DNA of 64,000 bases from Asterias rubens (Eukaryota): assembly GCF_902459465.1 (NCBI RefSeq), contig NC_047075.1:310001-374000 (forward strand), read 5' to 3'. The translations under genes and the position numbers were made by a program. Within the stretch, counting starts at the first letter, position 1. Each line of letters begins with the position of its first letter. The notes under the pieces are model-generated. The model was not told the origin of the DNA. It ran no database searches and was given only the letters and a program-made list of their open reading frames with translations. Of the stretch, positions 22,985 through 63,098 are shown piece after piece.

Positions 22985-25900
22985 TTATCTCATAATATTT
23001 GACCTAATGGTCTCCTTATCATTCATTGGATAACCATCTACTGAATATTCATTAGTTTGCATAATATCAATGACATCACTATCAGTTACTTCCATTGATG
23101 TAAAACTCTGTGTATTGAACCCACTATCTGCCTGCATTGGTGTGACCTCTCGCTGGATGACCTTTGACCTTGGACTTGCTGCCGGGAACCCTCCAAGTGT
23201 AACAGACTTTTGATGTATAAACTTTCCATCAGGTTCTGGGCTGGAACCATCTAAGTCGAGGTGGGTACCATCTAAGCCAAGGTGGGATTTTGATGTTGTA
23301 GGAATAGCGCTGAGTACCGATGAAGTATTACTGGGTACCAGTTTTAAGGTGGAAGTGAGTTGCTTTCGGGATGTGAATAACTGGTGCCGCATGCTCTCAT
23401 CAACTTGAAATGATGGGATATCGTCGGAACTGTACATGCTACTGCCAACTGGGTTGAGCATCTCCTGGTCATCGTCAAGGAACAGATGGTCCTCCGATGG
23501 TTGAGTACCACTACAGGTTAAATCATCAGAACACTTGCTGGGGTTGAATACATACGACTGCTCCATACTACACATGGAAGAGGAAGCTGCGTCTGGGCTG
23601 GATGATTCAGAATCGATGGAATCACTGTGATCATTGGAATCACTAAGATCAGTTGGGTCTCTTACTGTCAATAAATCACTCGCTTGAAGGAAGTCAGTCA
23701 TGGGTACATCATCTATGAATAAAATATATACAACAAAATCAATCAAATTGATGTATCCAAATTGGCTGTTACAGCTATGGTTACGACTGTTGCTATGGGT
23801 GTTGTTAAAGAAATACTCTACTTCAATGCAATAGCGGAAACCTGGCTGCCTAGAGAAGACTGGTGCTTCACTCCCTGATGACCCAGCACCCCACAACTCT
23901 TGTGGGAGACAAGGATCAAGCCTTGTGGGAGATGAAGATAAAGACAATACCAACTTAAAATCGGAGTTGGCGGCTACAGCTACGACTCTTGCCAAGATTG
24001 TTGCTAAGGGTATCATTTCAATGTTGTTGTTGTTGTTTCGTTTTTATTTTATTTTTTATAATCTCCAGTCAAGGGAAATCATCAAACTCCCACAAGGGGA
24101 TATAAACACCAAGCTGGCAACATCAAATCTCTCTCATACAAACATTGGTTTTAACTTCAATGATGAATTGCACAAATCTAGAAATTGAGATTCAGTAACT
24201 ATAGATGACAATAGTTACTCCAGTCTTTGCTGAATGAGTGATTAGCTTGGACATTTGAACCAACAACTTTGTAATTGTAATTTCGGCTGTCCAACCACTG
24301 GATCCATGTATGATGACGCACAAATCTAGACTTAGCCGGCAATTCAGATAAAGGATTTCTACAAACTTTATCGTACCAATTTTGTCTGCCACAGATGTAG
24401 GGTTTTTCTCAAACTCGACATCACTTGCGCAGAATGACATTGCCATTATCTCTTCACTCGAGGGCGCTAGAAGCATCTCGCTGGACTTGGATTGAGGATT
24501 TGCAAAGATGGGTGAGGCTTCTGGTAGTAATAAACCACTAGAGGGCGCTCCACTTGTGTTGGAAGAGTTCAATACTAGCTGGGGAGAATCTATCAAATCA
24601 AATGTTTCATTATTATTGTTATTTATTTGACAAAGAAAAACCAAAAGGAGCAAAAACAAGAAGATGAATAAAAAAGTAATCCAAACGAAAATAATAACAG
24701 GGAAACAACAGAAAGGAACAAATAGGTAAGAAGGCCCTGAAGAATTAATAAAAAGTGTGAACAAATATTTGACCTTTGTTATCTTTTCTTAGTCAAGTCA
24801 GGGTTTTATTGTGGCAACAATTTTTTTAAATGAAACCGATAACTCCAGTAGTTCTTAAAAGTAAACAAAAATAAATAAATACCGCACATGAGTGCAGAAT
24901 TTGGTTATCTTCGGCAAGGATTTTCTAGTTTAAGAAAGTTCTGTGCTTATAAATGATGTAAACTCTGACGTCACTCGAAAACCATAACATGATTCGTGCG
25001 CATACCGCCCGAAACCTCTGTGTTTTGGCAGCCAGCTAGAAAGTGTATGCAATCTTACCATGACTACGCGTCTTTTTGCCCGGCGAAACATGATGTATAC
25101 ATTGTTTTGTCAACAGAGGGCGGTTTGAATGTAAACATAGGTCACATCGTCTATAAGCAGCTCTATGACCTTGGACCCAGTACCTGTTGCTGGTGAGTAT
25201 ACACTGCCTGAGATGGGAGAGAAAGCTGGAGAGCACATGAGACCAGTGGATGTAGAGCCTTGACGACAAGGTGTCCAACGTCCAGGCGTCATCTTACTAG
25301 AGATAGGACTCGATGAAAACTGACTCTGTAGAGAAATTCAACAGCAATTTACAATCAGTAATAACCAACATGTTTTATGGAAGGTCTAAGTCTTGACTCT
25401 TAACATCTCCAACATCTCGTCTAACATCTCCAAAATTTGCAATCGCTGGTTGCCATAGTTTATTCTGTAGAGCTTCTGCTTCATAGGGTGCTTTTGATTA
25501 GCTTCCCTGTGTTGACCCTGCTGTGCTCACTCAGGTGAGCCCCTGACAAGAGGTAATCGAACGATCACACTCGCCCTTTCATGGTGACGTGATGCAACTT
25601 AGGCCAGCCCCAAGTGACCCGTTCCACAAGCAGGGCACTTGGGACTGACCCGGTTGAGCCCCTGGGGAAGCTAATTGAACGCACCCATTAATACCTTTAA
25701 ACAGTGGATTTGAATTTCCACTCATGAAGCATGTGTACACGCTACTTGAGACAATTTAACTTTTGGCAAACGAATCAGGGAAGTGAATTTGACAAGATAA
25801 ACAATAAACCTTTGAACTTACTTGCACTGATTCTGGAGTATTGACAAGACTAATATCTGAACTTGATAATGTAGAGTCATCTACTTGTCTAATGGGAGAA

Positions 25901-28900
25901 ACCTAATGGGTTTAAAACAACAAAGACATGATGAGTTTATAAAAACATTTATAGAGCGCATTATTCGAGGGGCCTCAAGGTGCTTCAAGGATAAAAACAG
26001 AAGCAAAAAAAACAAAACAAAGTTAAAACATGTTCACTCAATGCTTTTTTTTACAAGTGAAGAACAAAGGAATGTCCACAGAGTGTAGAGATTTGAACAC
26101 TATGTGGACTTACACAAATGTTTGGAGGGATAGGGTTTTTCTTAAGTGTACAGGGGTCGATTTCACAAAGAGATAAGACTAGTCTTTCTGAAGTTAGGAC
26201 CAGTAACTGGTTTTATCTCTTATACAGCATTGCCTAGGACTAGTCCTAAGTTAAGAAGAGTTTTGTGAAATCGACCCCAGAACAAATGAATGTACACAGA
26301 GTGTTTGCAACTTATAGTGGGTTTGTATGGCCTACCCTCCGAGGACATTTTTTCGATATGGACAATAGAGGCCTTCATCAAACCTTGGCTTAGGCTCCAG
26401 CTCAGGCTCTGCGTGCAATACGCGCTGCTCCAAAGTGCAGGTTAAAGGCCGAGCTGCGTACACAGCCCGCGGAGCCTAAGCCTGAGCCGGAGCCCAAGCG
26501 AAAGGCCCCAGGTCCTCACTAGTCGGTTCTTTGTTTGCATGGATCCTCACTAGTCATTTGTGTACAAAACCAATAGGGATTGCTTCAATACAGGAACAAC
26601 AGAAAGAACAATAGGTGTCCTCTAATGTAATGGTTAAACACGACTGTGTGTGTACGCACCTGTGGTGATGGGATATCTGGTATTGTTTCTGGAGAGTGTT
26701 CATCATTGAGCCCTCCTCTAGCTGCAGTTACAGTTGGGCTGGATTCTCCGATACTAAACAGCTTACGACGTAGGGTAGAAGTACTAAGCTCATTACACTC
26801 ATCCGCTTCCTTGTCTTCTTGGTTAAATCTGTCTCCTTAGAAAATAAAGTTTATATTGATGATTAGCAAAATCATCATTCTTGGTATCAAACCTATTTTA
26901 TATCAATGGTTTGTAGTATCCGCTGCTAAAACATAGGATTTGGACTGCCTCTAGCCACCGGGCAATCTCAGTGGTCTAGTTGGTATGACACTGCTCTAGA
27001 ATTGCAAAGGTTGTGGGTTCGAATCCCACCCAAATAATATGCCTGTGATTTTTTTCACAGGGTTCGGGTAAGTACTGAGTATACAGTGCTAACACACATC
27101 GATGTTTGACCTCTTCCACGCGCGTCACATGCAGCGACTGTTCCACCCTCACCATTTTGGTGGTCAATAGGTTTATGTGTAAACGCCCTGTCACCTTAAA
27201 ACGCACTTCACCAAATAACACACGTTGACAGTCTACCCATCAAGTACACATGGTGTTACCACAAACCAAATACTACACTTTTAATTTATCAAAAACAGAA
27301 TTTACCGAGAACAGCTAGAAGATCAAAATCCATCGGCAATGACACGGTGGTCTGACAAGACACTAGGAAGAAAAATAAATAAGAAATGCAAAAACATTTG
27401 AAATTCTTCAATAAATGACTGACTTTTCATGTCTTTACAAATAAAAATTTTGCTTAACAGGAATCAAAAGAATACCAGTCAGAAAGTGTACATAAGACAT
27501 GGTAGTTTGGCCGGTAACCTATTCTAATAAGTAAAATTTGGTTATGCTGAGTAGTTCAATGAAATTGGTCTCTGTGCTTAATAGATAGGTTGCAATACGC
27601 GCACACCTGTGCACTTGTCCCTTGTTAACACATCAAAGATGGCGGCCGATGACAAGTACATGTATCGCAATCCATTATCTACTGTAAAACTTGCTGGAAA
27701 ATGCAATATTAGTGGGAGGGTTAATGTTCAGCCTAGAATTGGACGTACCTTCAACTCTATCCTGTTGTCTTGTACTCATATTAACTTGAGGAGGCAATAT
27801 TAGTGGGAGGGTTAATGTTCAGCCTAGAATTGGACTTACCTTCAACTCTATCCTGTTGTCTTGTACTCATATTAACTTGAGGAGGCAATATTAGTGGGAG
27901 GGTTAATGTTCAGCCTAGAATTGGACGTACCTTCAACTCTATCCTGTTGTCTTGTACTCATATTAACTTGAGGAGGCAATATTAGTGGGAGGGTTAATGT
28001 TCAGCCTAGAATTGGACGTATCTTCAACTCTATCCTGTTGTCTTGTACTCATATTAACTTGAGGAGGCAATATTAGTGGGAGGGTTAATGTTCAGCCTAG
28101 AATTGGACTTACCTGCAACTCTATCCTGTTGTCTTGTACTCATATTAACTTGAGGAGGCAATATAAGTGGGAGGGTTAATGTTCAGCCTAGAATTGGACT
28201 TACCTGCAACTCTATCCTGTTGTCTTGTACTCATATTAACTTGAGGAGGCAATATTAGTGGGAGGGTTAATGTTCAGCCTAGAATTGGACTTACCTGCAA
28301 CTCTATCCTGTTGTCTTGTACTCATATTAACTTGAGGAGGCAATATTAGTGGGAGGGTTAATGTTCAGCCTAGAATTGGACTTACCTTCAACTCTATCCT
28401 GTTGTCTTGTACTCATATTAACTTGAGGAGGCAATATTAGTGGGAGGGTTAATGTTCAGCCTAGAATTGGACGTACCTTCAACTCTATCCTGTTGTCTTG
28501 TACTCATATTAACTTGAGGAGGCAATATTAGTGGGAGGGTTAATGTTCAGCCTAGAATTGGACATACCTTCAACTCTATCCTGTTGTCTTGTACTCATAT
28601 TAACTTGAGGAGGCAACATTAGTGGGAGGGTTAATGTTCAGCCTAGAATTGGACTTACCTTCAACTCTATCCTGTTGTCTTGTACTCATATTAACTTGAG
28701 GAGGCAATATTAGTGGGAGGGTTAATGTTCAGCCTAGAATTGGACTTACCTTCAACTCTATCCTGTTGTCTTGTACTCATATTAACTTGAGGAGGCAACA
28801 TTAGTGGGAGGGTTAATGTTCAGCCTAGAATTGGACTTACCTTCAACTCTATCCTGTTGTCTTGTACTCATATTAACTTGAGGACTGCACTCAACACTGT

Positions 28901-29340: not shown

Positions 29341-30878
29341 ATTGTTTAATTGTATTAATAAACACCTCACAGAGTTTATGAAAATTCAACTGCCTAAAGA
29401 ATTGCCCTTGAGAATAATTCAAAAAGAAATTCAACTAAAGGAAAACCACAAATTCTTGTTCACATTTCTTTGTCATGAACAGTATTTTTAGTGGCAATAA
29501 TAGTGTGAGGGGTCGGACACTGTGTATAAGTGACCCATAAACTTACCTGATATTGTTGGTGGATTGGGGGAAAAAGTCACATGCTTCAATGGTTTCTTGA
29601 CCGACCACGGTGATGGCACAATATGTTGCTGTGAGAAAAACTGTACACAAATAACAAAATATAAATCAATGAATTATTCTGACTTATAACAAGTTTTTTT
29701 TATCATTTAGAAATTACTTTTGAGCTTGTCAAACCTCACTCCATAAGTAACCAGTGGGTTTGTCAAAAGTTATCAACGACAATATCACAGAAACAAGAGG
29801 AAATGTAAGTGTGGTTTGGTACAATGGAGTAAGAAAACAAGATACTGGTAAAATGAAACGTGTTGTGAAACAAGCATCGAAAATCCTAGGGATAGACATT
29901 GATCTTGATGAAACTTGCAAAGATAAGGTTCAATCTAAAGCAGAGGCAGTAACACCAACCATCCATTGAACAAATTGTTCATTAAAACTAAGGAGTGGTA
30001 GGAGATGGCAGTTATTTTGATGCAAAACAAACAGGTACCTCAACTCCTTCATACCATACTCTGTCCGTCTCCTCAATCATCAACCCAGACATGAACTACA
30101 TTCTTTACTTTTTGCTAAGATGTTATATGAATTTTCATCCATGGTAGGACCATTAAAGATAAATTGAATTGAATTGGAATCAGGGTTTGTGGTTAATAAT
30201 AACTACTACCAATGTCTCTCCGTAATCAACAATCTGTCAATGTGTTCAAAACACTGCTCAAAACTCACCTGTTCTGTTAACAACATCTCTGCCAAGCGCA
30301 TTTGAACATGGAAAATGCGCTATATAAATACATTATTATTATTATTACCTGATCTATAGCTTGCTGAGCTCTTTCTTCAGTGTCGCTATCGAACGTACTC
30401 TCTTGTTGTACTGGATACTCATCAATGTCCGCTGGATGAAGGACTGCAAGATGATCTATTGACCAACGGAATTTACCTTTACTCTAGAAAATAAACAATA
30501 CAAAGTGATTTACATCAAAAACAGTTATAGGCCTCAAAATAATCCATGTCACTCACAGCAGTAGGGGACTTTCGGGACGCTTGGTGGCAGCAGACTTACC
30601 AGGTAAAATCCCTTGTTCCCGGTAATGTGCGCGTGCTCAGAACTACGTAAACAATGGACATTTCTAGGAGTAGGGATGGGGTTAAGTGTGGGGAGGAGCT
30701 GAGGGTGATGAAAATACCATACCTGTGAACTGGAAGGGGTCAACACACTTTTAGAAAACACAGATGGACTAAACTGCGTCAGATGAAGGCTGTCCACACT
30801 GTCTGCTTCAAATGGATTCAATGTTGTGTTTTTGCTCGACATACTCGAATCGGGGGGCACTTTTTGTTGACAATCCAT
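22985..30878 (-). CDS. BORA: Protein aurora borealis (Bora), Aurora A/Plk1 cofactor (566 aa)
   Basis: Eight in-phase exons: 30878-30723, 30483-30349, 29640-29547, 27362-27306, 26835-26660, 25325-25184, 24589-24377, 23712-22985 (1701 nt). Bora motifs are present: LNPFE...SPSVF, GKFRWSIDHLAVLHPADID, FF...IVPSPW, CQTTVSLPMDFDL, STLRRKLF, QFSSSP, and a beta-TrCP-type degron DSGFNT (23111-23128). Confidence 0.95.
26965..27075 (+). mobile_element. tRNA-derived SINE
   Basis: Box A tggtctagttgg and box B ggttcgaatcc, followed by a non-tRNA tail; a related, interrupted copy is at 21860-22200. Confidence 0.75.
27703..28883. repeat. 91-bp tandem array, 13 near-identical copies, in a BORA intron
   Basis: Unit gcaatattagtgggagggttaatgttcagcctagaattggac(g/t)taccttcaactctatcctgttgtcttgtactcatattaacttgaggag; starts at 27703, 27794, 27885 and so on. 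Confidence 0.97.
29290..29340. repeat. (ATT)n microsatellite forming a retroposon 3' tail
   Basis: About 16 ATT units preceded by a gcgc...ggcgct stem typical of the LINE/SINE tails seen elsewhere in the window. Confidence 0.85.
29790..30180 (+). mobile_element. 5'-truncated non-LTR retrotransposon remnant (CR1/L2/Rex-like ORF2 3' end)
   Basis: The degenerate frame reads VVWYNGVRKQDTGKMKRVVKQASKILG...LRSGRR...KTNRYLNSFIPYSVRLLN, followed by an (ttgaa)n tail. This matches the C-terminus of CR1-group ORF2 proteins. Confidence 0.75.
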
Positions 30879-32426
30879 TCTGTTGTTCGTTGCACGTAAA
30901 AAACTAAGAAGAAAAGGAAAAAAAGGCATCATTGTAACTTCATAAAGTAATTTCTATGAACAGCACTACAGGCAGGCAGGAATGTAAGAATGTAGCTAAG
31001 ATGAGAAAGCCTAGTTAATTGCGATAACGTAACCCTCTTCACCGCAGGTAGGAGCGAGGGTTACGTTATCGCAACTAAAGTAAAGAAAGCCTTGGTCGTG
31101 TTGGTTCATGTAGTGTAGATGTAGGTTTGACTTGTTTATAAAATTATGCCTGTTGGGTTGGGGCATAATGGCTATCAGGCTATGGCCACTCCTAGCCCCT
31201 AGAATAAGTAGAACTATGCGGTTTCGTTTTGCTATCGTCTCCCGTAACCTCATACATAATCATACTAGACGTACATCTCTCCTGACAATAACGATACTGG
31301 TTCATTCAATAAATTTTGGAATCGCAAATCTCTTTATTTTTTATCTAGCCAAAATTAGGCTCTATATGTATGTGTTCTTTGAACTCTCATTGGCCCTGGG
31401 GCGACAGAAAATCCACTTTAATCTCTTAATTATTAAAATGATAAATTCTTACCGTAAAAATTCAGTCCCCCAACTTCAACTAAAGAACTACTCTTACCAC
31501 ACCTAGACTGCCACTAAATGCCGATAAGTTTTTGGTCAAATATTTTATAATATAATGATCCAATACAAACATGACAACTATTCCATTACCGGTGTAGGAT
31601 TTCTACCTCCGCCAACCATTAAATTGACGATGTGTGTAATAATAATATTCTGTACACACACCGACCGCCGACGGATTGGAAATCGAATTTGTCGAACTCG
31701 AAAAGTCACTCGTCAACCAACGAATAAACAACCCCCCACTACCACTAAAACTATCCAGTGATTAAATAGACTGGTCGAGCCAGTATCTCTGTCCTTACTC
31801 TATGCTCCAATAAAATGCCAACAATGTTAATAAGAACTGATTTACCAAAACATTCCGGAAGTTCATTTTATAATAACCACTTACCTTTAGCTAAATTTAA
31901 AAACATCAAAGTTGCAGATTGAGATTGTACTTTTAAATTTCTCAAAGCACTGCGCCTATTTTGGTGTTAGTGTGGTCTCAGTCTAACGAACGTTTCATTC
32001 TAGATACCAGGGAGGCCGATACTAGACTAGTTAATTGTACCTGGGTACCAGATCAGGGAACGCAGAAATTGGCGTGCAGAGTACAGCCAGTGAGCACCAC
32101 ACTAAACTACGGAGGCTTAAAGATGCCATGCTGATTATCGAAAGTGGAGGGCGGGGCGCGGGCGGGGGGGGGGGCTTTTAGCTACAGTTATGATTCAAGG
32201 TAACGAAGACGAGCGAACAAGACTGCATGAAGTTATGTTAATAATAACTTGAATGTTGCATATTTACCCAAATAAAAAGTTGTGCATATGTGGGGCCCAG
32301 CTGAACCGAAACAATTTCAATGGCCTTCAGTAGTGTACAATCTTGGGCCTTAATTCGATTAATGGACATAACGCACTTAGATCAAACCTTCTTAGTTTTT
32401 TCAAACTTTGGGAACTATGTGGGCGT

Positions 32427-32803
32427 TTAAAGACACTGGACACTATTGGTAATTGTCAAAGACCAGTCCTCTCACTTGGTATCGCAACAATATGCAGAAA
32501 ATAACAAACATGTAAAAATTTGAGCTTATGATTGGTCGTCGAAGTTGCGAGAGCTAATAATGAAAGAAAAAACACGAAGTTGTGTGCTTTCAGAAGCTTT
32601 ATTTCGAGACCTCAAAATCTAATTCGAAGTCTCGAAATCAAATTCGTGGAAAATTACTTCCTTCTTAAAAACTACGTCACCTCAGAGAGAGCCGTTTCTC
32701 TCAGTGTTTTATACTACCAACCTCTCCCCATTACTCGTTACAAAATAAGGTTTTATGCCAATAATTATTTTGAGTAATTACCAATAGTGACCACTGCCTT
32801 TAA
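32427..32803. mobile_element. TTAA-flanked non-autonomous DNA transposon (Kolobok/piggyBac-type ends)
   Basis: TIR ttaaagacactggacactattggtaatt / aattaccaatagtgaccactgcctttaa. Family copies are at 49009-49387 and 59674-60020, with partial copies at about 8680-8800, 34990-35263, 36525-36660 and 53372-53945. Confidence 0.8.
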
Positions 32804-34474: not shown

Positions 34475-35388
34475 GTGAGTTAGTATTTTTCTTTAAAGCG
34501 GTATTTTTTTTCAAAGTAGGCTCAAAAGATTGATTCTTCATTCAGAAGCCTTGTTTACAGTTTTTGTAACAATTTTAGAGCTCTACAAGTGAGATGAGAG
34601 GATAGCCCTAATTTAAACAATTTTAGGCAGTGTTTTCTTTCAAAGACATAATAGTACAACAAATTACAAAGGTAAAATATGCAAAGATGAACAATGAAAG
34701 CTAAAATCGTAACAAATACGCATTAGAAAACATTATTGTTTCAATTTTGAATAAAACAATCATAGGATACCATTCGCAGTAAAAAGGTTTTGTGTATAAC
34801 CAATGGCGTCTCTTATGTTAGGATTCCTTTCGTTTTTATTCGCTTTAACGAAGCTCAACGAGCCTTTTGCTGCCATAATCATTCAAATTCCCTCAGAGGG
34901 AAAGAGGGGTGGGGCTGTAATCAATTACTCCTTTTTAAGTCTGTATATATTAGAAGTTTCTTATTCATGAACAAAATAATGGAATTTCGTTCCCGGATTC
35001 TGGTGTGATTATTTTGCGATAGTCGTTTGGTTGAATGCCAGTCATCTCGCCCCCCCCCCCCCACGTTGAGTTCGAAACCTCAGCCGAGGTCTCGAATTCA
35101 TGGCATCTGAAAGCACAAAACTTATGCGGAAAGGGTGTTTTTTCTTCCATTATTCTCCCGCACTTTCGACACCCAATTGAGCTCAAATTTTCACAGGTTT
35201 GTTATTTTTATGCATGTTGAGATACACCAAGTGGAAAGACTGGTCTTTATTGCCTTTAAGTCTCATCTAGAACTTCTTTTGTTTCGTCAGTTTGTAAGAG
35301 TTGTGAGTCTCATTTGAAATGCTGACTCTAAACCTTATAAACAATTCAATTTGTATTTGTTTTGATTTTTCAGGGGAAACAATTCAAG

Positions 35389-36495
35389 ATGCTGAAATTC
35401 GCCCTTATTGTGGGCGTGGCTTGCCTCTTGGCTATCAGTGAGGGTCGACCAGCAACGAATGACCGTGAAGATGATTTAATGAACTTGATGAAAGAGGTTA
35501 TTGAGGATGAACTGAAGGAAGATCTAATGGCAAAACTAGAGATACTTGAGGAGTCCGCAAGTACGTCATAATTTATTGTCATAATCTAGGTTTCGCCACT
35601 GCCTTTATGGTTCAATGTAACAAAGCTAATACACTTCGATTACGACACAATCATAGTGTTGTTGATGTTTATGTTATTTGATGTCATTTCGATTTTTTCA
35701 GGTATAAGCTGGTCAGAGCGCCCAGAAGGCAGCAGACCACCACGCCCTGAAGGCAGCAGACCACCACGCCCAGACGGCAGCAGACCACCACGCCCAGACG
35801 GCAGCAGACCACCACGCCCAGAAGGCAGCAGACCACCACGCCCAGAAGGCAGCAGACCACCACGCCCAGAAGGCAGCAGACCACCACGCCCAGAAGGCAG
35901 CAGACCACCACCAGAAGAGGAGCGTGAGTTTAGGGAGGAACGCAAACCCAAAGAAGAAGACAGACCAGAGCGCCCTGAAGGCAGTAGACCACCACGCCCT
36001 GAAGGCAGCAGACAACCACGCCCAGAAGGCAGCAGACCACCACGCCCAGAAGGCAGCAGACCACCACGCCCAGAAGGCAGCAGACCACCACGCCCAGAAG
36101 GCAGCAGACCACCACGCCCAGAAGGCAGCAGACCACCACGCCCAGAAGGCAGCAGACCACCACCAGAAGAGGAGCGTGAGTTTAGGGAGGACCGCAAACC
36201 CGAGGAAGAAGACAGACCAGAGCGCCCAGAAGGCAGCAGACCACCACGCCCTGAAGGCAGCAGACCACCACGCCCAGAAGGCAGCAGACCACCACGCCCA
36301 GAAGGCAGCCGACCACCACGCCCAGAAGGCAGCAGACCACCACGCCCTGAAGGCAGCAGACCACCACGCCCAGAAGGCAGCAGACCACCACGCCCAGAAG
36401 GTAGCCAGGAACCTCCTCAAGATGAAGATCTTGTTGAGGAGTTGCGGGGGGACCGTAAGCTGATGAGTCTTTACCGTCGTCTCCTACGAGGTTAA
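35389..36495 (+). CDS. Uncharacterised secreted Arg/Pro-rich repeat protein (RPEGSRPP x24), 321 aa
   Basis: Exon 35389-35560 (signal peptide MLKFALIVGVACLLAISEG plus an acidic segment; donor A|GTACGT) splices in phase 1 to exon 35702-36495 (acceptor TTTTTTCAG; stop TAA). The ATG context is CAAGATGC. There is an upstream acceptor at 35373, a TATA box with a noncoding exon upstream, and AATAAA at 36735. Confidence 0.88.
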
Positions 36496-37232
36496 ACCAA
36501 AATCTTATAAACTAATATCGACAATGGAATCTTGTTTTAAAACTACGTTACTTCAGAGGGAACCTGTTCTCACAATGTTTTATCAACGGTTCCCCATTGC
36601 TCGTAATTATAATACTAACAATTATTTTGAGTGGACCAATAGTGTCAAAATGCCTTGAATGTGTGGTTAATTATTACTTCATTATAGGTCCGACTGCTAT
36701 ACTTTACCCTAAATTTGAAGATTTTTGATTGAACAATAAAATAAGACCCTTCTTCGATTGTTTACAAGCAGGGCCCAATTTCATAGCTCTGCTAAGCGTA
36801 TAAGCAAAGAATCGGCGCTTGCCCTGCAAGCGTAGAATGGTGATCGTAAGCGCAGAATTCAGCACTAAGCAGAGGGCTATGAATATGGGTTCGGTTTGGG
36901 CCCATGGTGGAGCTATGACCCTATACCACTGTTACACGCGATAATGCCGGACACTCTCTCGCCGCCATTTTGTGACTCAATTTTGATAAGTGTGTAAAAC
37001 GCCACTTTGCCCCATAAAGTAATGTACACTAAAGTTGTTTAACTCCCAAACTGGTGCGAGCAAGGTTATTAAGTATTAGGATTTGAAACTTTGCATAGTG
37101 GTGGAAGTATAACCATGAGATCGAAACAAGATCTGTAAACCGCAGAACAAACACTACTCAAACAAAGATTATTCACATGGTGTTACCACAAACCTCTCTT
37201 TACTATGGGTTCTCTTTACTATGCGTTCGTTT

Positions 37233-48029: not shown

Positions 48030-48650
48030 CAAAGTACGGTCTGTGCAAAAGCAATGGGTACAGGAATATTGCCATATCCCGGATCCACAGCACGTAAATG
48101 TAACGGTCTGTCTTCTCATATACTGTACACAAGCAATGGTACAGGAATATTTCCATATCCCGGGTCCACAGCACGTAAATGTAACGGTCTGTCTTCTCAT
48201 ATACTGTGCACAAGCAATGGGAGCAGGAATATTGCCATATCCCGGATCCACAGCACGTAAATGTAACGGTCTGTCTTCTCATATACTGTGCACAAGCAAT
48301 GGGTACAGGAATATTGCCATATCCCGGATCCACTAAGGCCCCATATTGTGCACAAGCAATGGGTACAGGAATATTGCCATATCCCGGGTCCACAGCACGA
48401 AAATGTAACGGTCTGTCTTCTCATATACTGTGCACAAGCAATGGGTACAGGAATATTGCCATATCTCGGATCCACTAAGGCCCCCATATTGTGCACAAGC
48501 AATGGGTGCAGGAATATTGCCATATCCCGGGTCCACAGCACGAAAATGTAACGGTCTGTCTTCTCATATACTGTGCACAAGCAATGGGAGCAGGAATATT
48601 GCCATATCCCGGGTCCAACCAAGGCCCATACACTGTACACAAAGCAACGG
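48030..48650. repeat. Tandem array of 82-bp and 60/61-bp units upstream of the TMED gene
   Basis: gcaatgg anchors at 48051, 48133, 48214, 48296, 48356, 48438, 48499, 48581; the shared core is tgtgcacaagcaatgggtacaggaatattgccatatcccgg. Confidence 0.95.
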
Positions 48651-48719: not shown

Positions 48720-50150
48720 TCTTGAAACCCTCTAAAAACAACATATCCAAAAAGTAGAAAAAATTAAGCAGGGGAAATATACATAATTTACATAAATTAA
48801 AAAGTTACCGTTTTTCCCCTAAAATTCGTATGCACACCCTATAATAAGTAGAAATTTTATTTGTTTCACATAATTATTTTCTGTTCATGGGAATGGTCAC
48901 TGCATTGTTTCTAAACATTGTGAATACAAAAAATTCAAGATGGCGGCCATTTTACCCGCCAAAATCGATTTAACGCTTTTATTAAAATGAATAGGATAAT
49001 AATCTGAGTTAAAGGCAGTGGACACTATTGGTAATTGTCAAAGACTAGCCTTCACAGTTGGTGTATCTCAACAAATAACAAACCTGTGAAAATTTGAGCT
49101 CAATCGGTCATCGAACTTGTAAGATAATAATGAAAGAAAAAAACACCCTTGTCACACGAAGTTGTGTGCGTTTAGATGGTTGATTTCGAGACCTCAAGTT
49201 CTAAATCTGAGGTATCGAAACCAAATTCGTGGGAAAATTACTTCTTTCTCGAAAACTATGGCACTTCAGAGGGAGCCGTTTCTCAAAATGTTTTATACCA
49301 TCAACCTCTCCCCATTACTCTTTACCAAGTAAGGTTTTATGCTAATAATTATTTTGAGTAATTACCAATAGTGTCCACTGCCTTTAAATAGGATAATAAT
49401 CTGAGTTAAATAACCCTACGTGGATGTACATGCTTTAGACTCCGTGGTAGGTTTAAATGTCCCTTTTAAAGTCGTGTGACAGTTCTTAACAGTTTTTATC
49501 ACTACAGAATCACATTTTACAAACTATACTTTTGACAATGGTATTTAAAAAAGAAACTATCAACTTGATACATTCCAAAGTATCTCTAACTTGCATGTAT
49601 GCAGTGTTTTACTGGAAAAGTTGCATGACCCCCAAATAGTATAATAATACCATTTTATTTATCCCAGATGCAAAAAAGACACAGTACGATGTTTTCATAC
49701 ATTTGAATTGGTATGCAATAGATTTTGATGTAACACTACCTCCAATACAATCGGTTTCAAGAGTTTGTAGAACTGAAATGGCGCAAACAAAACTGTCAGT
49801 GGCTACCTGAGGCGAATTCGTACAGTTTATTCCCTTGCATTTGCAACACACTACTGAGCATTCCAAGCATCACAGTCTGTTTTGCATTTGCATCGGATCG
49901 AATCACCTTTAAATTAATAGATTGTATAGTTATCTTAGGTTATGTTAACTGGCGATAAGGGTTTTGGTGGAAAAATGGCCGCCATCTTGGACTGTTCTTG
50001 CTCATGTGTTTGGAATGTTTAGCGACCATAAAAAATTCTACTTGAATTAGGGTGTAGTTTTGGGGGAAAACGGTTATATATATTATTTAATAATATATGC
50101 AAATTATCTACCAAGTTATCATCTGTCTTTAGCTTCTTTAGGGAACCATT
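48720..50150. mobile_element. Old internally deleted DNA transposon with long imperfect TIRs and a Cys-rich ORF remnant
   Basis: Inverted segments accgtttttcccc...caccct...agtagaa (48808-48852) versus 50030-50073, and caagatggcggccatttt (48937) versus aaaatggccgccatcttg (49973). The minus-strand remnant reads VIR..CKCKTDC / LECSVVCCKCKGINCTNS (about 49800-49905). Confidence 0.6.
49009..49387. mobile_element. TTAA-flanked non-autonomous DNA transposon, full-length copy
   Basis: ttaaaggcagtggacactattggtaatt ... aattaccaatagtgtccactgcctttaa (28-bp perfect TIR including the TTAA). Confidence 0.85.
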
Positions 50151-52005: not shown

Positions 52006-55000
52006 ATGGAGCCACTATGGCGCCGGTTCGCCGTTGGATTCACTGTGGCGTTACTGATATCTTGCAGTTGCGGTGAGTAGAATTTAAACTCAAACCGTTT
52101 AGGCTTTTAACATTTCAATTACATTAAAAAACTTAGTGCTGTTTGCAAGTTTTTGTTTAAACCACATTAAACATTACTTCACAGTAAGTAGCACCCTCAA
52201 GTAGGCCAACTAAAGAATTGCTAGCGATTATGTTTTTGTTTTGTTTATTTACAAAATGTTTCACTGTATAAAGTATAGGTCCCGATTTCCATATATACTC
52301 GTTCAGACAATTTGCTGAAATATTTCTCTGCTAAGCAAATCTAAGCAGGAAGCAATATCACAAAGCTACATGTCGTGTGGCATTTTGGCTTGGAATTCTA
52401 AGTTTTAGTTTAGCCGATTTGTCTTTTTTTAGCTATTTTTGGTGCATAGCAGCTCTTTGAATTTTAGGTTGTGGTAAAAGCACAATAAAGTTTGTTTTGG
52501 GAGTAAAAAGAAGGTCACGAACTCAGTTGTATTAAAGGCCTATAAATTACACTAAGAGAAGGTGGTTTGCCCGCTGGTGTTCCTGGCAGTGGCTGCTGAA
52601 TATTATGCCAGGGGCACTTTGTAACAAAAGGTGTTACATATGAGTCTCATAATTTCAAAGAAACTTCAAATACCCATACCGCAAAGCAAAGAGTTGACCC
52701 CATTATCAAAGACCAAAGCTTCAACAATACATTTTTAAAGAAGAAAAACTGTCAAAAAGCTCATTAAAAACGTTAACATTGCTTTCTCAGTTTACCATAA
52801 AGAGAGAGAAAACTTTTAACCGTACGGTTTCCATTAGGCCCTTTCAAGACAGACATTATGCGAATATTAGGCCTAAGGTTTTTCTCTCGCAAAATAGCTG
52901 CTCGCAGTAGACCCCATTTTCCACCAAACTTATGTAATAATTTCCATCTTTATGTAAAGGGAATAAGCCTAAAGTGATTTGTGATTATAGCGAGCCATAA
53001 ATACAACCTTTGAACGTGAAACATCTTAATCCATTTTATCAACAAATAATGATTTCAATCTTATCTAAGTCTAGGTCAGTTGTGATAAGACACCAAAAAA
53101 GGAAAAGAGACCGTACGTCCAGCCAAACTTTATTAACGATAAAAAAATCTGATTGATTTGCAATCTGTTTAAAATAGTTAAGTATTTTTTTAAACGAGAC
53201 CATACAAGCAAAGGCGAATCTTTGGCACACATTGCAGAATACCCCGCACCCCCGAAGTACCTTCGTTTTTTTTCGTTTGTTTTTCTTTCTTTTTTCTTTT
53301 TTTCTTTTTTGGGGGGGGAGGTGTTTTCTTTAATGGATTATTTTTATTCTTATGAAAATGTGTACATGGCCTTGAAGCGGTGGACACTATTGGTAATTAC
53401 TCAAAATAATTATAAGCATTATACTAATAATAATAATGAAAACTTATAAAGCGCACAAATCCACAGAAGTGCTCATGGCGCTAAAACACAAACAATAGCA
53501 TTAATTACTATACAATAACTACAACACAAATTGAAATGTAAACCTAAGTTGAGAGAAATCTAGAACATGTGGTATATAATACAATAATACAAATGCAATT
53601 ATTAAAGAAAAAACATCTTAAAAGGTAAAAAAAATAGCAATAATTAAAACCTTTCTTGGTGACGAGTAATGGGGAGAGGTTGATAGTATAAAACATTGTG
53701 AGAAACGGCCCACTCTGATGTGCCATAGTTTTCGAGAAAGAAGTAATTTTCCACGAATTTGATTTCGAGACCTCATATCAAGAACTTGAGGTCTCGAAAT
53801 CAACCATCCATACGCAAACAACTTCGTATGACAAGGGTGTTTTTTCTTTCATTTAATATAAGTTTGATGACCGATTGAGCTAAAATTTTCACAGGTTTGT
53901 TATTTTATGCATATGTTGAGATACACCAACTGTGAAGGCTAGTCTATGAAAATATTATTACACCCCAAAAAAGTCCCCGGCGGCCCTGCGCACCCTCCCC
54001 CTTCCCCCGCCCCTCCCTCTACCACGGATCGTGTATCATTGCATTGCCCGTCGTGTTTCGAAAAAGCCCATACTCTCTTCTTGCCACTTGGGGGCGCTGT
54101 GCAAAATCTGGGACTCTTTTTGCGTGCTTTTTTAAATCGGTGTCAAAAAAAGTGAAGAAATTACACATTTTGTGTTTGAATTATCTCGTCAAATTGCTAT
54201 CAAATGACATGAACATCAAAGCTAGTCATTTAACATAGATTACTAAAGGTAAGGCGAAGTTTAATGTGGTTTTAAATACATGTTGAGCGTTGCATTTTGA
54301 CTGACAGGCATTGCATTTATTTTGTTCACTTCATGAAGTTCATGGATGATGGAGGATCAGAGAAGAGTAAGGAGAGTTGTCGGGTTGTGTTAACACGTTA
54401 CCGTAACCGAAGACTAAATAGAGTGATAACTTTCCGTATGGCGCCACCACTTTTTCACTCATTTTTACAAAAAGGAATATATCAATCAGGTAAATTAGAT
54501 ACTTAATAATTCTATTTCGAATGAAATAGTGGTGGCGCCATACAGAAACTTTTCCATATCCTATTGTTCTTCTATCTACTAAAATACTATGTAGTATGTA
54601 GGGGAGTGCTACATTACGTTTACTCTTCAAAGCCAAAGTCCCACAACCTTTGCTTTAGAATTAGATCATTCATCATCGAGCTAGCCTGTATCTGTTTTGT
54701 ATTTTGTATTTATATTTTATTTATTTGTCGGTTTCTTTCTTTCCCAGTTCATCATGGAAATTGTCAAGGTTCAATCACTGTGGTACCTCCGGTTTCAAGC
54801 CGTAAGTATTGTTGGTCGGTAAACTAATAAGAGTACAACTGTGAGTGTGAAGTGAAGTTTTTGAAGACCTCATTCTAGTTCTAGAAGTAGTACAGATGGA
54901 AATAGGTTAATGATAGTTTTTTGTTGGGAGTGTATTTAAAAAATATATTTTGTGATAAAACATGAGGAAAACTTACTGGGCAAATTTTACATAATTTCGG

Positions 55001-61000: not shown

Positions 61001-63098
61001 CAAACTTAAATAAAGGTTGGCTTAGTCTATTGATTAAAAGTATTGGTTAAAGACAACTTGTGCAAGACAACTTGTTGCATGGTGTGGCAGAAACAGTTAA
61101 GAGCACCAGACTCAAGCTCTGCTGTTTGAGCAGAGTGTGGGTTTGAGTTTTGGTCGTCGCAACTTGGTTCTACAAAATAGCAGAACATGTTATTTCACGA
61201 AAGAAAGCCGACACAATTTCGTATTGATCATTATACTCTACTTTTTAAACATCTTTCATCTTCTTTTCATATAACAAAGACTTTTATAGCCCAATTCAAC
61301 TGAATATTGTTTTCCAGAGAGTTGTGATTTCGAGTCGGGAACCTGTCTGTGGACAAATGACATCACAGGTGATGTATTTGATTGGCTGCGTCTGAGTGGA
61401 ACGACTGCAAGCACATACACTGGACCCATTGTCGATCATACAACACTCAGTCAAAGCGGTAAGTAAAGTTACATCTCTACCCGACACTAGAGTGCGGTAT
61501 TCACAATCCATCACAATCCGTTGTGGTAACACTATGTTTATATCTTCTTGAAAGGTAGATTATGATCTTTTGAGAACTTTTCTGGATTTATATTTACTAT
61601 CCGTGGAGTAGATTTTTCAGTAGTAGAATATATAGCTAGACAAAAATCTACCTAGCAAGTAGATGCACACATGGTGTTACCGCAAACCAAATAAACATTG
61701 ATAGCTCACCATGCAATGCCTCAAATCCCATATAAAGAAATGAATCAAATTGTTTTTGCTTCTATATGTATGTATCCCCGTCTAGGTTTTTACATGTACA
61801 CAGAAACTAGCTCTCCTAGAGTAGTCGGAGAGAGCGCCATCTTCCGGAGCCCAGAGATTGTTCCTAGCGTCGGTGACGGTCCAATCTGCCTTACCTTCTG
61901 GTATCACATGTTTGGTACCGATATCGGTGAGCTTAGTGTTTCTGTGGTAACAGAGCCATCTACAGCCAATGAAGCAGTCACGTTGAGATGGCTGGTAAGC
62001 GGGCAGAAGAGTACCGATGAATATGACTGGCTGAGTGGGCAGTTTGAGGTGTCTGAGACTCTACCTTTTCAGGTTTGTTGATTATTTAGTAAACTTTCAA
62101 AAAAGGTAATCCAACAAGAATCTCAAACAAGATTCCTTGTGAGTTGGACAATGTTTTCTCAAGAAATATACTTATCTTTGATTTTGACTTGATTTTATAT
62201 TCTTCACCCTAATTCTCTTTCTTACAATTACACAGATGAGAAAACTAGACTAGAAATGTTGTTAGTTATTTCCTTCTTGGATGTTCAGACCATGGGGTGG
62301 AATGGTCTGAAGGCGCCTTATTCACAGTATCTCCTTACTCTGACGAGCAGTCTGTCTGTGGTTACATCGTGCCTCAACAGATATTTGATTTGATTTGTTA
62401 CAGGTTACCTTTGAAGGTATTGTTGGGATAACATATCTCGGAGACATCGCTATTGATGATATTGAACTCATCAGTGGAACCTGTACTAGTAAGTCACTTT
62501 AATATGACTGTTAATTATGAGTTTATCACAGTTATCCATAACCTTGTGGCGTGTAAAGGCCGAGCAGTTAAGAGAACCAGACTTGGTTTGATTTCATAGA
62601 GATACGCTTAAGCTTAAAACTCTGCTCACCAGAATAAGCTTACCAGCCCAAGTACATGTACCATGACCCTTGTCCCCTGTGCTAACTTTTTGCTTAGCAA
62701 CAATTTTGTAGGCAAAATTGACTGCTTATCAGCAGCGCTATAAAATTGGGCCCATGTGTTTTTAATTCATAGAGTATTGGTAGCAGAGACATTCTCTGCA
62801 CTGTCAGATTTCGCTCACTAAAAACATGAAAAATGTCCACCTAATTATACCATTGACACGTTTTTAAATTGATAAGTTTTTCTTCTTTTATTTATAAAAT
62901 TTCTTGAAATTTCTGTTGCCATTTTAGCACAACCGAGTGCAGCAGATCCTTTCCTCTATGTCAACAACTGCACATGTGACTTTGAATCCCTCTTGTGTTC
63001 ATGGACTCAAGATACAGCGGATGTATTTGATTGGACGTTAACAACAACCTCCACTCCCTCAGCGGGGACTGGACCAACATCAGAACACAACGCTGCTG
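52006..63098 (+). CDS. Multi-MAM-domain secreted/membrane protein (MALRD1/apical endosomal glycoprotein-like), 5' part; continues beyond the window
   Basis: Twelve in-phase exons: 52006-52072 (signal peptide [22 protein letters not shown]), 54748-54801, 55350-55493, 57458-57723, 58166-58250, 58679-58825, 60065-60219, 60772-60967, 61318-61458, 61786-62072, 62404-62488, 62928-63098. These give three complete MAM domains and the start of a fourth (C.FE...C...Q...D.FDW...G.T.S..TGP..DH, G.YMY.E.S, FWYHM.G, V.FEG.VG....DIAIDD). Confidence 0.93.
55219..55310 (+). mobile_element. tRNA-derived SINE (second family)
   Basis: tagctcaagtggtagag (box A) ... ggttccaatcccactctagtcaattctttgttcaaccc; the same tail appears at 58912-59022 and reversed at about 55010-55045 and 59560-59640. 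Confidence 0.75.
59674..60020. mobile_element. TTAA-flanked non-autonomous DNA transposon copy ending 45 bp before a MAM exon
   Basis: ttaaagggaaggtacatgtttggtaatt ... aattaccaaacgtgtacagtgcctttaa; the interior is homologous to the other copies. Confidence 0.75.

What the first reader, a model, noticed from the sequence alone, without database searches (positions are those of the whole stretch)
35389..36495. Unrecognised secreted precursor: signal peptide, acidic pro-region and 24 RPEGSRPP repeats
This is a compact TATA-driven gene with an intact splice structure and polyA signal. It encodes a 19-aa signal, an acidic probably helical segment (NDREDDLMNLMKEVIEDELKEDL...), and Arg/Pro-rich octamers in cationic blocks separated by acidic spacers, with no Cys in the mature part. 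I do not recognise it as a named family. The layout recalls multi-copy proline-arginine antimicrobial precursors (apidaecin type) and also polyampholyte adhesive, mucus or biomineral matrix proteins. It is the best candidate here for an undescribed system.
Basis: partly seen in the sequence, partly recalled or inferred. Interest (0 to 1): 0.8.

Follow-up and report, generated by a model that had tools for sequence, protein, structure and literature searches.

The report
Orphan secreted proline-arginine repeat protein gene
This sea star has a small two-exon gene for a secreted, floppy protein made mostly of 24 near-identical eight-residue repeats; it fits no named family, and it resembles the many lineage-specific repeat proteins of animals more than a new kind of system.

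Summary
Exon 1 (35389-35560) encodes a 19-aa signal peptide and a 33-residue acidic helix. A 141-nt GT..AG intron in phase 1 joins it to exon 2 (35702-36495). The product is 321 aa with 24 octamers (23 RP[ED]GSR[PQ]P and one degenerate) in three blocks of eight, two 20-aa acidic spacers and a cationic amphipathic C-terminal helix containing an RGD.

Pfam, PDB sequences and the paper library gave no named family. Only the leader has real relatives. It matches three marine metatranscriptome fragments (about 60% identity, E 1.8e-7 against 1.84 billion proteins), so the family is transcribed somewhere. It also matches same-species genomic contigs. I found no spliced transcript of this gene.

The repeat matches elsewhere are compositional: exact RPPRPEGS arrays occur in tails of bacterial S1-domain proteins.

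The apidaecin or peptide-precursor reading is not supported, because the array has no processing sites and every array Arg precedes Pro. The charge is well mixed, not blocky beyond shuffles.

Best reading: a taxonomically restricted secreted disordered protein, forming an extended protease-resistant polyproline-type linker between two terminal helices. Its array is a recently amplified coding minisatellite. Function is inferred only. Interest is modest.

The parts
35336..35341 (+). TATAAA, a candidate TATA box 53 nt upstream of the ATG (unverified)
   Evidence: Read directly from the sequence. There is no transcript evidence. The acceptor-like tract ending at 35373 is an alternative explanation for the 5' end.
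35389..35445 (+). Signal peptide, residues 1-19. It has a basic n-region (MLK), a 13-residue hydrophobic core and a small-residue c-region (S-E-G), with predicted cleavage before Arg-Pro-Ala.
   Evidence: Translation. AF2 predicts a helix at residues 3-17. The hydrophobic core and the RPA motif after the cleavage site are conserved in P0038, P0039 and P0041. SignalP was not available.
35446..35560 (+). Acidic amphipathic helix, the rest of exon 1 (the N-terminal segment, residues 20-63, has net charge -9). This is the only part with significant homologues.
   Evidence: AF2 predicts a helix at residues 24-56 with pLDDT about 80. The phmmer hits have E 1.8e-7 and 7.1e-4 against 1.84 billion proteins. 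The invariant residues are L, M, EVIED and the later Leu/Glu positions.
35561..35701 (+). Intron of 141 nt, GT..AG, phase 1
   Evidence: The donor is CAA|GTACGT and the acceptor is a polypyrimidine tract followed by CAG|G. Joining them gives a 966-nt uninterrupted CDS. Same-species genomic contigs read through into the intron and stop after 3 codons (P0037, P0040).
35719..35910 (+). Octamer block 1: 8 units of 24 bp, residues 64-127, net charge +8
   Evidence: TRF reports period 24, 8.0 copies and 97% matches.
35911..35970 (+). Acidic spacer 1, residues 128-147, net charge -4, with a short predicted helix
   Evidence: AF2 predicts a helix at exon-2 residues 71-77.
35971..36162 (+). Octamer block 2: 8 units, residues 148-211, net charge +8
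   Evidence: TRF and the unit table.
36163..36222 (+). Acidic spacer 2, residues 212-231, net charge -6
36223..36414 (+). Octamer block 3: 7 clean units plus one degenerate unit, residues 232-295
   Evidence: TRF reports 7.6 copies.
36424..36489 (+). C-terminal amphipathic, partly cationic helix, residues 299-320. RGD lies at residues 306-308 (36445-36453), and the protein ends in Gly followed by the stop codon.
   Evidence: AF2 predicts helices at exon-2 residues 241-249 and 251-262 with pLDDT 80-82. This segment has the highest hydrophobic moment in the protein, 0.69. One RGD is expected 0.22 times by chance.
36493..36495 (+). Stop codon TAA
36735..36740 (+). AATAAA, a candidate polyadenylation signal about 240 nt after the stop
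   Evidence: Read from the sequence. There is no transcript evidence.
35086..35248 (.). Dispersed repeat copy upstream of the gene; not part of the gene
   Evidence: blastn of the locus against the window finds 75-78% identical copies at 49040-49195, 32458-32613, 53788-53945 and 59895-59989.
36539..36659 (.). Dispersed repeat fragment inside the presumed 3' UTR
   Evidence: blastn finds copies at 49252-49387, 59739-59809 and 53662-53732.

Best explanation
This is a real two-exon gene of a sea star. It encodes a 321-aa secreted, intrinsically disordered protein of a small, taxonomically restricted family. The family is recognisable only by its leader, a signal peptide followed by a conserved acidic amphipathic helix.

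The body of the protein is a coding minisatellite. A 24-bp unit encoding RPEGSRPP was amplified to eight copies, and that block plus a 60-bp spacer was then amplified about three-fold. This happened so recently, or is so strongly homogenised, that the units are 95-100% identical at the DNA level.

Inferred mechanism: after signal cleavage, the mature 302-aa chain is a nearly neutral, well-mixed strong polyampholyte with 26% proline. Such a chain should stay soluble and extended, with polyproline-II-like segments of roughly 20 nm per block if fully extended. It should also resist trypsin-like and convertase-type proteases, because every Arg in the arrays precedes Pro.

The two folded elements are the N-terminal acidic helix and the C-terminal cationic amphipathic helix with its RGD. 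They are the likely binding or self-association modules. The protein would then act as a flexible extracellular spacer, tether or coating (mucus-like or matrix-like) rather than as a source of small peptides.

Shown here: the gene anatomy, the repeats, the leader homology, the predicted helices and disorder, and the lack of any family match. Inferred only: secretion, extended conformation, protease resistance in vivo, and the role of the helices.
For: Gene model:
- The phase-matched GT..AG intron gives one uninterrupted 966-nt CDS.
- Position -3 of the ATG is A, and the ATG aligns with the start of the homologues.

Leader homology:
- The exon-1 translation hits P0038 (63% identity, E 1.8e-7) and P0039 (E 7.1e-4) among 1.84 billion representatives.
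- A profile search adds P0041.
- All three come from marine metatranscriptome runs (source 'merc': ERR1711962, ERR1712198).
- Their reading frames continue past the position of our exon boundary into a K/R/E/P-rich sequence. So the family is transcribed, and its leader is followed by a charged, Pro-containing region.

Reading frame:
- Among variants between units, 7 of 10 are synonymous in the RPEGSRPP frame, against 1 of 10 and 3 of 10 in the other two + frames.

Structure:
- AF2 gives pLDDT 50-60 with no secondary structure across the arrays, and a confident C-terminal helix.
- The leader helix is predicted at residues 24-56.

Composition and charge:
- The fraction of charged residues is 0.45, net charge per residue 0.01 and Pro 26%. 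Charge mixing is no different from shuffles.
- 51 of 69 basic residues precede Pro, and the limit tryptic peptides are 55-84 aa long.

No named family: Pfam, PDB and the Atlas (best scores 0.67-0.82, all generic small secreted disordered proteins).
Against: - No spliced transcript or protein of this gene itself was found. The protein collection holds only its exon-1 read-through ORF from genomic contigs.
- Four frames are open across the array, so the ORF alone proves nothing.
- Differences between super-repeats are about neutral (2 synonymous to 5 non-synonymous between copies 1 and 2). Constraint on the array is therefore not demonstrated.
- Similarity to the homologues downstream of the helix is not above composition: 153 of 500 shuffles reach the observed score.
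- The spacer, tether or coating function rests on physico-chemical inference only. Nothing localises the protein to a tissue or stage.
Confidence: 0.5

Rival explanations
1. It is a bioactive-peptide or host-defence precursor. Either the array is cut into many Pro/Arg-rich octapeptides (apidaecin-like), or the repeats act as a neutralising pro-region and the product is the C-terminal cationic amphipathic peptide. That peptide would be released at the Arg-Lys site (residues 309-310) and amidated using the terminal Gly.
For: - The layout of signal peptide plus acidic propiece recalls frog-skin and defensin prepro-regions. The Atlas lists FSAP_sig_propep and Defensin_propep clusters for exon 1, but only at scores of 0.65-0.67.
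- The C-terminal 18 residues have the highest hydrophobic moment in the protein (0.69) and are cationic. They are predicted helical with pLDDT 80.
- A dibasic RK precedes that helix, and the chain ends in Gly then the stop codon.
- A conserved leader with an unalignable downstream part is the pattern seen in fast-evolving defence peptide families.
Against: - There are no dibasic or dipeptidyl-spacer sites inside the arrays.
- R-x-x-R motifs are all followed by Pro, which, from my knowledge of convertase specificity, is a poor P1' residue.
- Each unit contains Glu and has net charge +1, unlike known Pro-rich antimicrobial peptides.
- Pfam families Apidaecin, FSAP_sig_propep and Defensin_propep do not match at E <= 1.
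- An internal RR (residues 316-317) would cut the putative C-terminal peptide.
- The homologues are truncated, so conservation of the C-terminus is unknown.
Confidence: 0.12
2. It is an adhesive, coacervating or biomineral-matrix polyampholyte, in which alternating cationic arrays and acidic spacers drive self-association or mineral or surface binding.
For: - Net charge alternates along the chain: -9, +8, -4, +8, -6, +7.
- Secreted, repetitive, fast-evolving disordered proteins are typical of matrices and glues (background in PMC5460417, and PMC9382459).
Against: - Charge segregation metrics are within the range of shuffled sequences.
- Charge density in the arrays is low (+1 per 8 residues).
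- There is no DOPA-type Tyr, no Cys, no Asp-rich or phospho-Ser (S-x-E) motifs (a single S-x-E), and no lectin, EGF or vWF domains.
- The sea star footprint proteins catalogued in PMC9382459 are described there as carrying recognisable domains such as EGF, vWF C, FAMeT and hyalin repeats, unlike this protein.
- The P. miniata skeleton proteome reports no repetitive matrix proteins.
Confidence: 0.13
3. It is not a functioning gene. A GC-rich minisatellite with period 24 expanded inside a decaying or silent gene, or next to a relic leader exon, and the open frame persists only because the unit lacks stop codons.
For: - The window is full of non-coding minisatellites.
- Four of six frames are open through the array.
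- Units are nearly identical, so they say little about selection.
- No transcript or annotated protein of this gene is in the collections searched.
Against: - Exon 1 is intact and 58-61% identical to expressed homologues.
- The intron has canonical sites, and its phase joins exactly the frame that also stays open through both non-repetitive spacers and the 29-aa tail. That tail ends in a confidently predicted helix.
- The unit period and the super-repeat period are both multiples of three.
- Unit variants are mostly synonymous in that frame.
- Repeat masking, and the breaking of short-read assemblies at the array, can explain the absence from protein sets. The ENA contigs end at 35698.
Confidence: 0.15

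Closest known systems
Unnamed leader-sharing transcripts from marine metatranscriptomes (P0038, P0039, P0041; source 'merc', runs ERR1711962 and ERR1712198)
   Same: They share the signal peptide, the Arg-Pro-Ala start of the mature chain and the acidic helix with its invariant EVIED core, at 58-61% identity to exon 1 (63% in the phmmer hit to P0038). The match is significant against 1.84 billion proteins. Downstream they are also charged and Pro-containing.
   Different: The downstream part is not alignable above composition and shows no octamer array in the 60-90 residues available. All three are fragments with no stop codon, so their full architecture, C-terminus and source organism are unknown.
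L002 / P0002, a secreted repeat protein from a JGI marine eukaryotic metatranscriptome (3300018965)
   Same: It has a signal peptide followed by an amphipathic helix, then octamers PEG[ST]RPP[KR] of the same period and almost the same sequence. These alternate with helix or spacer modules, and the protein ends in an amphipathic helix.
   Different: Its N-terminus has no detectable similarity to exon 1. Its spacers are long helices rather than short acidic linkers. The similarity is confined to the low-complexity repeat, so common descent cannot be separated from convergence.
Arg/Pro/Glu/Gly-rich C-terminal tails of bacterial S1-domain (Tex-like) proteins and pseudouridine synthases (for example P0001)
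   Same: They contain exact RPPRPEGS octamer arrays, up to 98% identical over the aligned stretch.
   Different: These are cytoplasmic bacterial nucleic-acid-binding proteins with folded domains and no signal peptide. The match is compositional convergence, and it shows that the repeat by itself carries no family information.
Apidaecin-type multi-copy Pro/Arg antimicrobial peptide precursors (Pfam PF00807)
   Same: Both have a signal peptide, a pro-region and many tandem Pro/Arg-containing units in one precursor.
   Different: There is no Pfam match. No RR or dipeptidyl-spacer processing sites lie between units. The units are 8 aa rather than about 18-20 aa, contain Glu, and have net charge +1.
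Sea urchin SpTransformer (Sp185/333) immune effector genes (compared from my own knowledge, not tested by sequence)
   Same: Both are small two-exon genes with a leader in exon 1 and a repeat-rich, intrinsically disordered secreted protein in exon 2, with an RGD motif and repeats embedded in repeat-rich DNA.
   Different: The composition differs (Gly- and His-rich versus Pro/Arg/Glu). There is no clustered gene family in this window. No homologue of the leader was found in any annotated echinoderm protein.
Extended Pro-rich polyampholyte spacers: the titin PEVK segment, the TonB (Glu-Pro)n(Lys-Pro)n rod, and the lubricin octamer mucin domain (functional analogies from my own knowledge)
   Same: All have a high Pro content with mixed acidic and basic residues in short tandem units. 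They are predicted or known to form extended polyproline-II-like chains that act as springs, rods or brushes.
   Different: There is no sequence relationship. PEVK and TonB are not secreted animal proteins. Lubricin relies on dense Thr O-glycosylation, whereas this protein has one Ser per unit and its glycosylation is untested.

Membership tests
Apidaecin-type multi-peptide precursor (PF00807) | Sequence match to the apidaecin family profile | tested here: not met
   hmmscan of both exon translations against Pfam-A at E <= 1 gave no Apidaecin hit. An Atlas 'apidaecins' cluster appears only at rank 30 with a score of 0.66, and for the homologue P0041.
Apidaecin-type multi-peptide precursor (PF00807) | Each repeated unit is flanked by processing signals (dibasic site plus X-Ala/X-Pro dipeptide spacer) | tested here: not met
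   Dibasic pairs occur only at residues 138, 222, 309 and 316, and none lies between octamers. All array Arg residues are followed by Pro.
Apidaecin-type multi-peptide precursor (PF00807) | Strongly cationic mature units of about 18-20 aa without acidic residues | tested here: not met
   The units are 8 aa long, contain one Glu or Asp, and have net charge +1. The mature protein has net charge +3.
Multi-copy neuropeptide or prohormone precursor | Repeated peptides bounded by KR/RR (or R-x-x-R) sites, often with a C-terminal Gly for amidation | tested here: not met
   No such sites bound the octamers. Only the extreme C-terminus has RK ... RR ... Gly-stop. The starfish neuropeptide precursor paper PMC4772807 contains none of the motif strings searched, although sequences shown only in figures are not held.
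Frog-skin active peptide type prepro-region (PF03032) / defensin propeptide (PF00879) | Profile match of the signal peptide plus acidic propiece | tested here: not met
   There was no Pfam hit at E <= 1. Atlas feature scores are only 0.65-0.67.
Echinoderm spicule-matrix proteins (SM30/SM50 type) | C-type lectin domain joined to Pro/Gly-rich acidic repeats | tested here: not met
   No lectin or any other Pfam domain was found. The repeats are Arg-rich and near neutral. A sea star skeleton proteome reports no such proteins (PMC5460417).
SpTransformer (Sp185/333) | Sequence elements of the family (Gly-rich and His-rich regions) and clustered paralogues | tested here: inconclusive
   No reference sequence was available to align. 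The composition clearly differs: Gly is 9% and His 0%. There is no paralogue in the 64-kb window. The leader search hit no annotated echinoderm protein.
Bindin (PF02084) | Conserved bindin core | tested here: not met
   There was no Pfam hit at E <= 1. The Atlas lists a bindin/collagen cluster only at a score of 0.65 (rank).
New leader-defined family (this gene plus P0038, P0039, P0041) | Signal peptide, Arg-Pro-Ala start and an acidic helix with an invariant EVIED core | tested here: met
   phmmer gave E 1.8e-7 and 7.1e-4. The profile search gave E 2e-26 to 7e-23 for the three fragments. The alignment has 27 invariant columns.
New leader-defined family (this gene plus P0038, P0039, P0041) | Octamer array downstream of the leader | tested here: inconclusive
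   The fragments end after 60-90 charged, Pro-containing residues and have no stop codon. Their similarity to the array is not above composition.

The most novel reading that the evidence does not exclude
The conserved leader (signal peptide plus acidic helix) marks an undescribed echinoderm family of secreted effectors in which a stable export and propiece module carries a hypervariable, rapidly expanding payload. This is the logic of frog-skin peptides or sea urchin SpTransformer proteins. In this sea star the payload would be a protease-proof Pro/Arg array and/or an amidated cationic C-terminal helix acting in host defence or surface coating.
Probability: 0.12. Interest if true: 0.65.

Novelty: new member of a known kind. 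Interest (0 to 1): 0.3.

Why it matters
If the gene is expressed, it adds an unannotated, lineage-restricted secreted protein to the sea star gene set. It also gives a clean example of a coding minisatellite with two levels of amplification (24 bp and 252 bp).

It shows why such genes are missed. Repeat masking hides them from gene predictors, and short-read assemblies break at the array. Trypsin cannot cut an array in which every Arg precedes Pro, so shotgun proteomics of mucus, coelomic fluid, adhesive or skeleton would not see it.

The practical value is a caution and a target list, not a new mechanism. The function can only be settled by expression and biochemical work.

Tried and rejected
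- **Word-indexed protein search with exon 2.** All 36 hits are low-complexity matches. Most are tails of bacterial Tex/S1, RluB-type and ProQ proteins, and a few are unrelated secreted repeat proteins. I rejected them as homologues.
- **Search restricted to the C-terminal 40 residues.** It found nothing.
- **Two scans of JGI metagenome contigs.** One used the leader alignment and one used exon 2. Pattern matches were found, but none was confirmed.
- **Exact look-ups.** The 279-aa exon-2 ORF is not on record, and neither are the 'merc' fragments.
- **Pfam, PDB sequences and the ESM Atlas.** No family emerged. The PDB hits are trypanosomatid eS21 tails.
- **Paper searches.** I searched for all rotations of the octamer, for leader words, and for starfish proline-rich, neuropeptide, adhesive and skeletal proteins. 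None describes this protein.
- **Paralogues in the window.** None was found by blastn or tblastn.
- **Homology of the post-helix region with P0041.** Rejected as unproven, because 153 of 500 shuffles reach the score.
- **Blocky-polyampholyte claim.** Rejected by the charge-patterning statistics.
- **Not attempted.** The two exons were searched separately instead.
Full report
**What is there.**
- An ATG at 35389, with A at -3, opens a 172-nt first coding exon. It ends at a CAA|GTACGT donor.
- A 141-nt intron (35561-35701) ends in a long T-rich tract and CAG.
- Exon 2 (35702-36495) continues in phase 1 to a TAA stop.
- Joined, they give a 966-nt CDS and a 321-aa product.
- TRF finds three arrays of period 24, each with about 8 copies at 95-97% identity. 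They sit inside a 252-bp super-repeat (2.7 copies, 96%).
- At the protein level there are 24 octamers. Twenty are exact RPEGSRPP, three are point variants and one is degenerate. They form three blocks of eight separated by two 20-aa acidic spacers.
- The single Cys lies in the signal peptide.
- TATAAA lies at 35336-35341 and AATAAA at 36735-36740.
The intron limits shift by one base at each end. An acceptor-like tract ends at 35373, just before the ATG, so an upstream non-coding exon is as likely as a TATA-proximal start.

**Is it more than chance?**
ORF length alone is not evidence, because four of the six frames are open across the whole array and the window is full of non-coding minisatellites. 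Four other observations support a gene.
- First, the canonical intron joins exon 1 in phase to the one frame that also stays open through the non-repetitive spacers and a 29-aa tail.
- Second, both repeat periods are multiples of three.
- Third, 7 of 10 variants among octamer units are synonymous in the RPEGSRPP frame, against 1 of 10 and 3 of 10 in the other + frames. The events are few, however, and super-repeat copies 1 and 2 differ by 2 synonymous and 5 non-synonymous changes. Constraint on the array is therefore not demonstrated.
- Fourth, and most important, exon 1 has significant relatives. A phmmer scan of 1.84 billion representatives returned only three hits.
  - One is a 60-aa read-through ORF of the same exon at 98% identity (P0037).
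  - The other two are fragments at 63% and 61% identity (P0038 with E 1.8e-7, P0039 with E 7.1e-4).
- A profile search added P0041.
- These three come from marine metatranscriptome runs (source 'merc': ERR1711962, ERR1712198).
- Their frames run on beyond the position of our exon boundary into a K/R/E/P-rich sequence.
- The leader family is therefore transcribed in some marine organism.

**What I could not show.**
No spliced transcript or annotated protein of this gene itself is in the collections.
- The exon-2 search returned no self-hit.
- The C-terminal search returned nothing.
- The 279-aa exon-2 ORF is not on record.
- The only same-species records are short genomic contigs from ENA 'SOLA' seawater metagenome assemblies.
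- One of these contigs (L001) is 99.8% identical to 35059-35698. It stops at the poly-C tract on one side and just short of the array on the other. This shows how short-read assemblies lose the gene.

**Anatomy of the product.**
- Residues 1-19 form a classical signal peptide with a small-residue S-E-G end. The mature chain starts Arg-Pro-Ala, and this start is conserved in the homologues.
- AF2 with the small alignment predicts one long helix at residues 24-56 with pLDDT about 80. It is acidic (the N-terminal segment has net charge -9) and contains the invariant EVIED core.
- AF2 on exon 2 gives pLDDT 50-60 with no secondary structure over the arrays, a short helix in spacer 1, and a confident C-terminal helix with pLDDT 80-82.
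- That C-terminal helix has the highest hydrophobic moment in the protein (0.69). It is cationic in its last 13 residues, contains RGD at 306-308, and ends in Gly then the stop codon.
- One RGD is expected 0.22 times by chance, so it is not evidence by itself.
- The mature protein has 69 basic and 66 acidic residues, giving a fraction of charged residues of 0.45 and a net charge per residue of 0.01. Pro makes up 26%.
- Net charge alternates by segment: -9, +8, -4, +8, -6, +7, -1.
- The Das-Pappu-type segregation measure and the sequence charge decoration are both within the range of shuffles (z = -1.2 and +0.3). The protein is a well-mixed polyampholyte, not a blocky one.
- 51 of 69 basic residues, including every Arg in the arrays, precede Pro. 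Limit tryptic peptides across the arrays are 55-84 residues long.

**Relatives and look-alikes.**
- Exon 2 finds many 'hits', but they are compositional.
  - Exact RPPRPEGS arrays occur in the C-terminal tails of bacterial S1-domain (Tex-like) proteins. Similar Arg/Pro/Glu/Gly-rich stretches occur in pseudouridine synthases and ProQ.
  - PDB hits are trypanosomatid eS21 tails.
  - This shows that the octamer carries no family information.
- One look-alike is more intriguing: L002/P0002, from a JGI marine eukaryotic metatranscriptome.
  - It has a signal peptide, an amphipathic helix and PEG[ST]RPP[KR] octamers alternating with helical modules, and it ends in an amphipathic helix.
  - Its N-terminus is not alignable to ours, so common descent and convergence cannot be separated.
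- Downstream of the leader helix, our protein and P0041 share composition and small motifs, but 153 of 500 shuffles reach the same alignment score.
- Homology is therefore established for the leader only.
- Pfam, a PDB profile search and the ESM Atlas give no named family. The best Atlas scores are 0.67-0.82, all for generic small secreted disordered proteins.
- No paper in the library contains the octamer in any rotation or the leader words.
- The starfish neuropeptide catalogue, the footprint-protein catalogue and the Patiria skeletal proteome do not describe anything like it.

**How it most likely works.**
I read it as a taxonomically restricted secreted disordered protein.
- The array is a young or homogenised coding minisatellite, amplified first at 24 bp and then at 252 bp.
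- A well-mixed, nearly neutral, 26%-Pro chain is expected to be soluble and extended, like polyproline II. This expectation follows from established polymer behaviour of such sequences and was not measured here.
- Arg-Pro bonds should make it refractory to trypsin-like proteases and prohormone convertases.
- The two confident helices at the ends are the plausible interaction modules. They have opposite net charge, so head-to-tail association is conceivable.
- This points to an extracellular spacer, tether or coating role, working like other Pro-rich polyampholyte rods and brushes (titin PEVK, the TonB rod, the lubricin octamer domain). None of these is related by descent.
- Confidence that this is a real gene for a secreted disordered repeat protein is about 0.75-0.8. 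Confidence in the spacer or coating function is about 0.3. Overall confidence is 0.5.

**Rivals.**
- **Peptide or antimicrobial precursor (0.12).**
  - The array lacks any processing sites, and its units are weakly cationic and contain Glu. The apidaecin analogy therefore fails its defining features.
  - The remaining version is a C-terminal amidated cationic helix released at Arg-Lys. It is not excluded but has no support beyond layout.
- **Adhesive, coacervate or biomineral matrix protein (0.13).** No charge blockiness beyond chance, no adhesive or mineral-binding chemistry and no domains were found.
- **Silent locus or expanded minisatellite in a decaying gene (0.15).** No transcript was found, but the intact leader, the phase-correct splice, the open non-repetitive parts and the synonymous bias argue against it.

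**Context.**
- Earlier notes of this scan call the genome a sea star. I did not verify the species.
- No paralogue lies in the window.
- The gene sits between Bora-like exons on the minus strand (22985-24016 and 30549-30932; weak BORA_N hit) and a MAM-domain exon at 61698-62081.
- It is flanked by dispersed repeat copies at 35086-35248 and 36539-36659.

**Verdict.**
'Unrecognised secreted protein' holds, while the apidaecin-type and coacervate analogies do not.
- It is a new member of a familiar kind, the lineage-specific secreted tandem-repeat disordered proteins. It has a small, newly delimited leader family.
- Interest is modest (0.3). It would rise if expression data placed it in an immune, adhesive or reproductive cell type.

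Noticed in passing
window 35700-36460: A second AG (35707-35708), 7 nt downstream of the acceptor, would join exon 1 in phase to another open frame. That frame has 251 codons of AQKAADHH-type His/Ala-rich octamers. Four of six frames are open across the array. Nothing indicates that the alternative frame is used, and unit variants are 1 synonymous to 9 non-synonymous in it.
   Followed up: partly
L001 (= window 35059-35698) and other ENA SOLA metagenome contigs: Genomic DNA of the same species (99.8% identical) was assembled independently in at least five coastal seawater metagenome assemblies (ERZ23498370, ERZ23498373, ERZ23498375, ERZ23498428, ERZ23498661). One carries a Lys-to-Asn polymorphism in the leader helix. 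L001, the one contig whose DNA could be read, ends at the poly-C tract and just short of the repeat array.
   Followed up: partly
L002 1-1335 (JGI 3300018965): This marine eukaryotic metatranscriptome contig encodes a secreted protein with PEG[ST]RPP[KR] octamers alternating with amphipathic helices. It has the same layout and nearly the same octamer as the sea star gene, but an unalignable N-terminus. The source organism is unknown, and the contig contains an N gap that I left as it is.
   Followed up: partly
P0009, P0010 (L003, L004; Logan SRR31540316, SRR30597361) and P0018: These are other small secreted proteins from unknown eukaryotes that carry PEGSRPPRP-like motifs in different repeat contexts. 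They suggest that this motif arises repeatedly in secreted Pro-rich proteins.
   Followed up: no
window 35049-35062: A run of 14 C residues lies about 330 nt upstream of the ATG. The metagenome contig L001 starts right after it.
   Followed up: no
window 22985-24016 and 30549-30932, minus strand: A large Ser-rich 343-aa ORF and a 127-aa ORF with a weak BORA_N (aurora borealis) Pfam match. They are probably exons of a Bora homologue, the upstream neighbour on the opposite strand.
   Followed up: partly
window 61698-62081, plus strand: An exon encoding a MAM domain (Pfam E 4.7e-13). It belongs to the downstream neighbour gene.
   Followed up: no
window 995-1817, 5617-6750, 14885-17027, 27703-28884, 48041-48627, 63496-64000: Six large non-coding minisatellite arrays, with periods of 57-150 bp and up to 28 copies, lie in one 64-kb window. 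The 14.9-17.0 kb array accounts for the local rise in GC.
   Followed up: no
window 26971-27030 and 55217-55289: Rfam tRNA matches just above threshold (39 and 34 bits) that ARAGORN does not call. They are probably tRNA-derived repeat (SINE-like) fragments.
   Followed up: no
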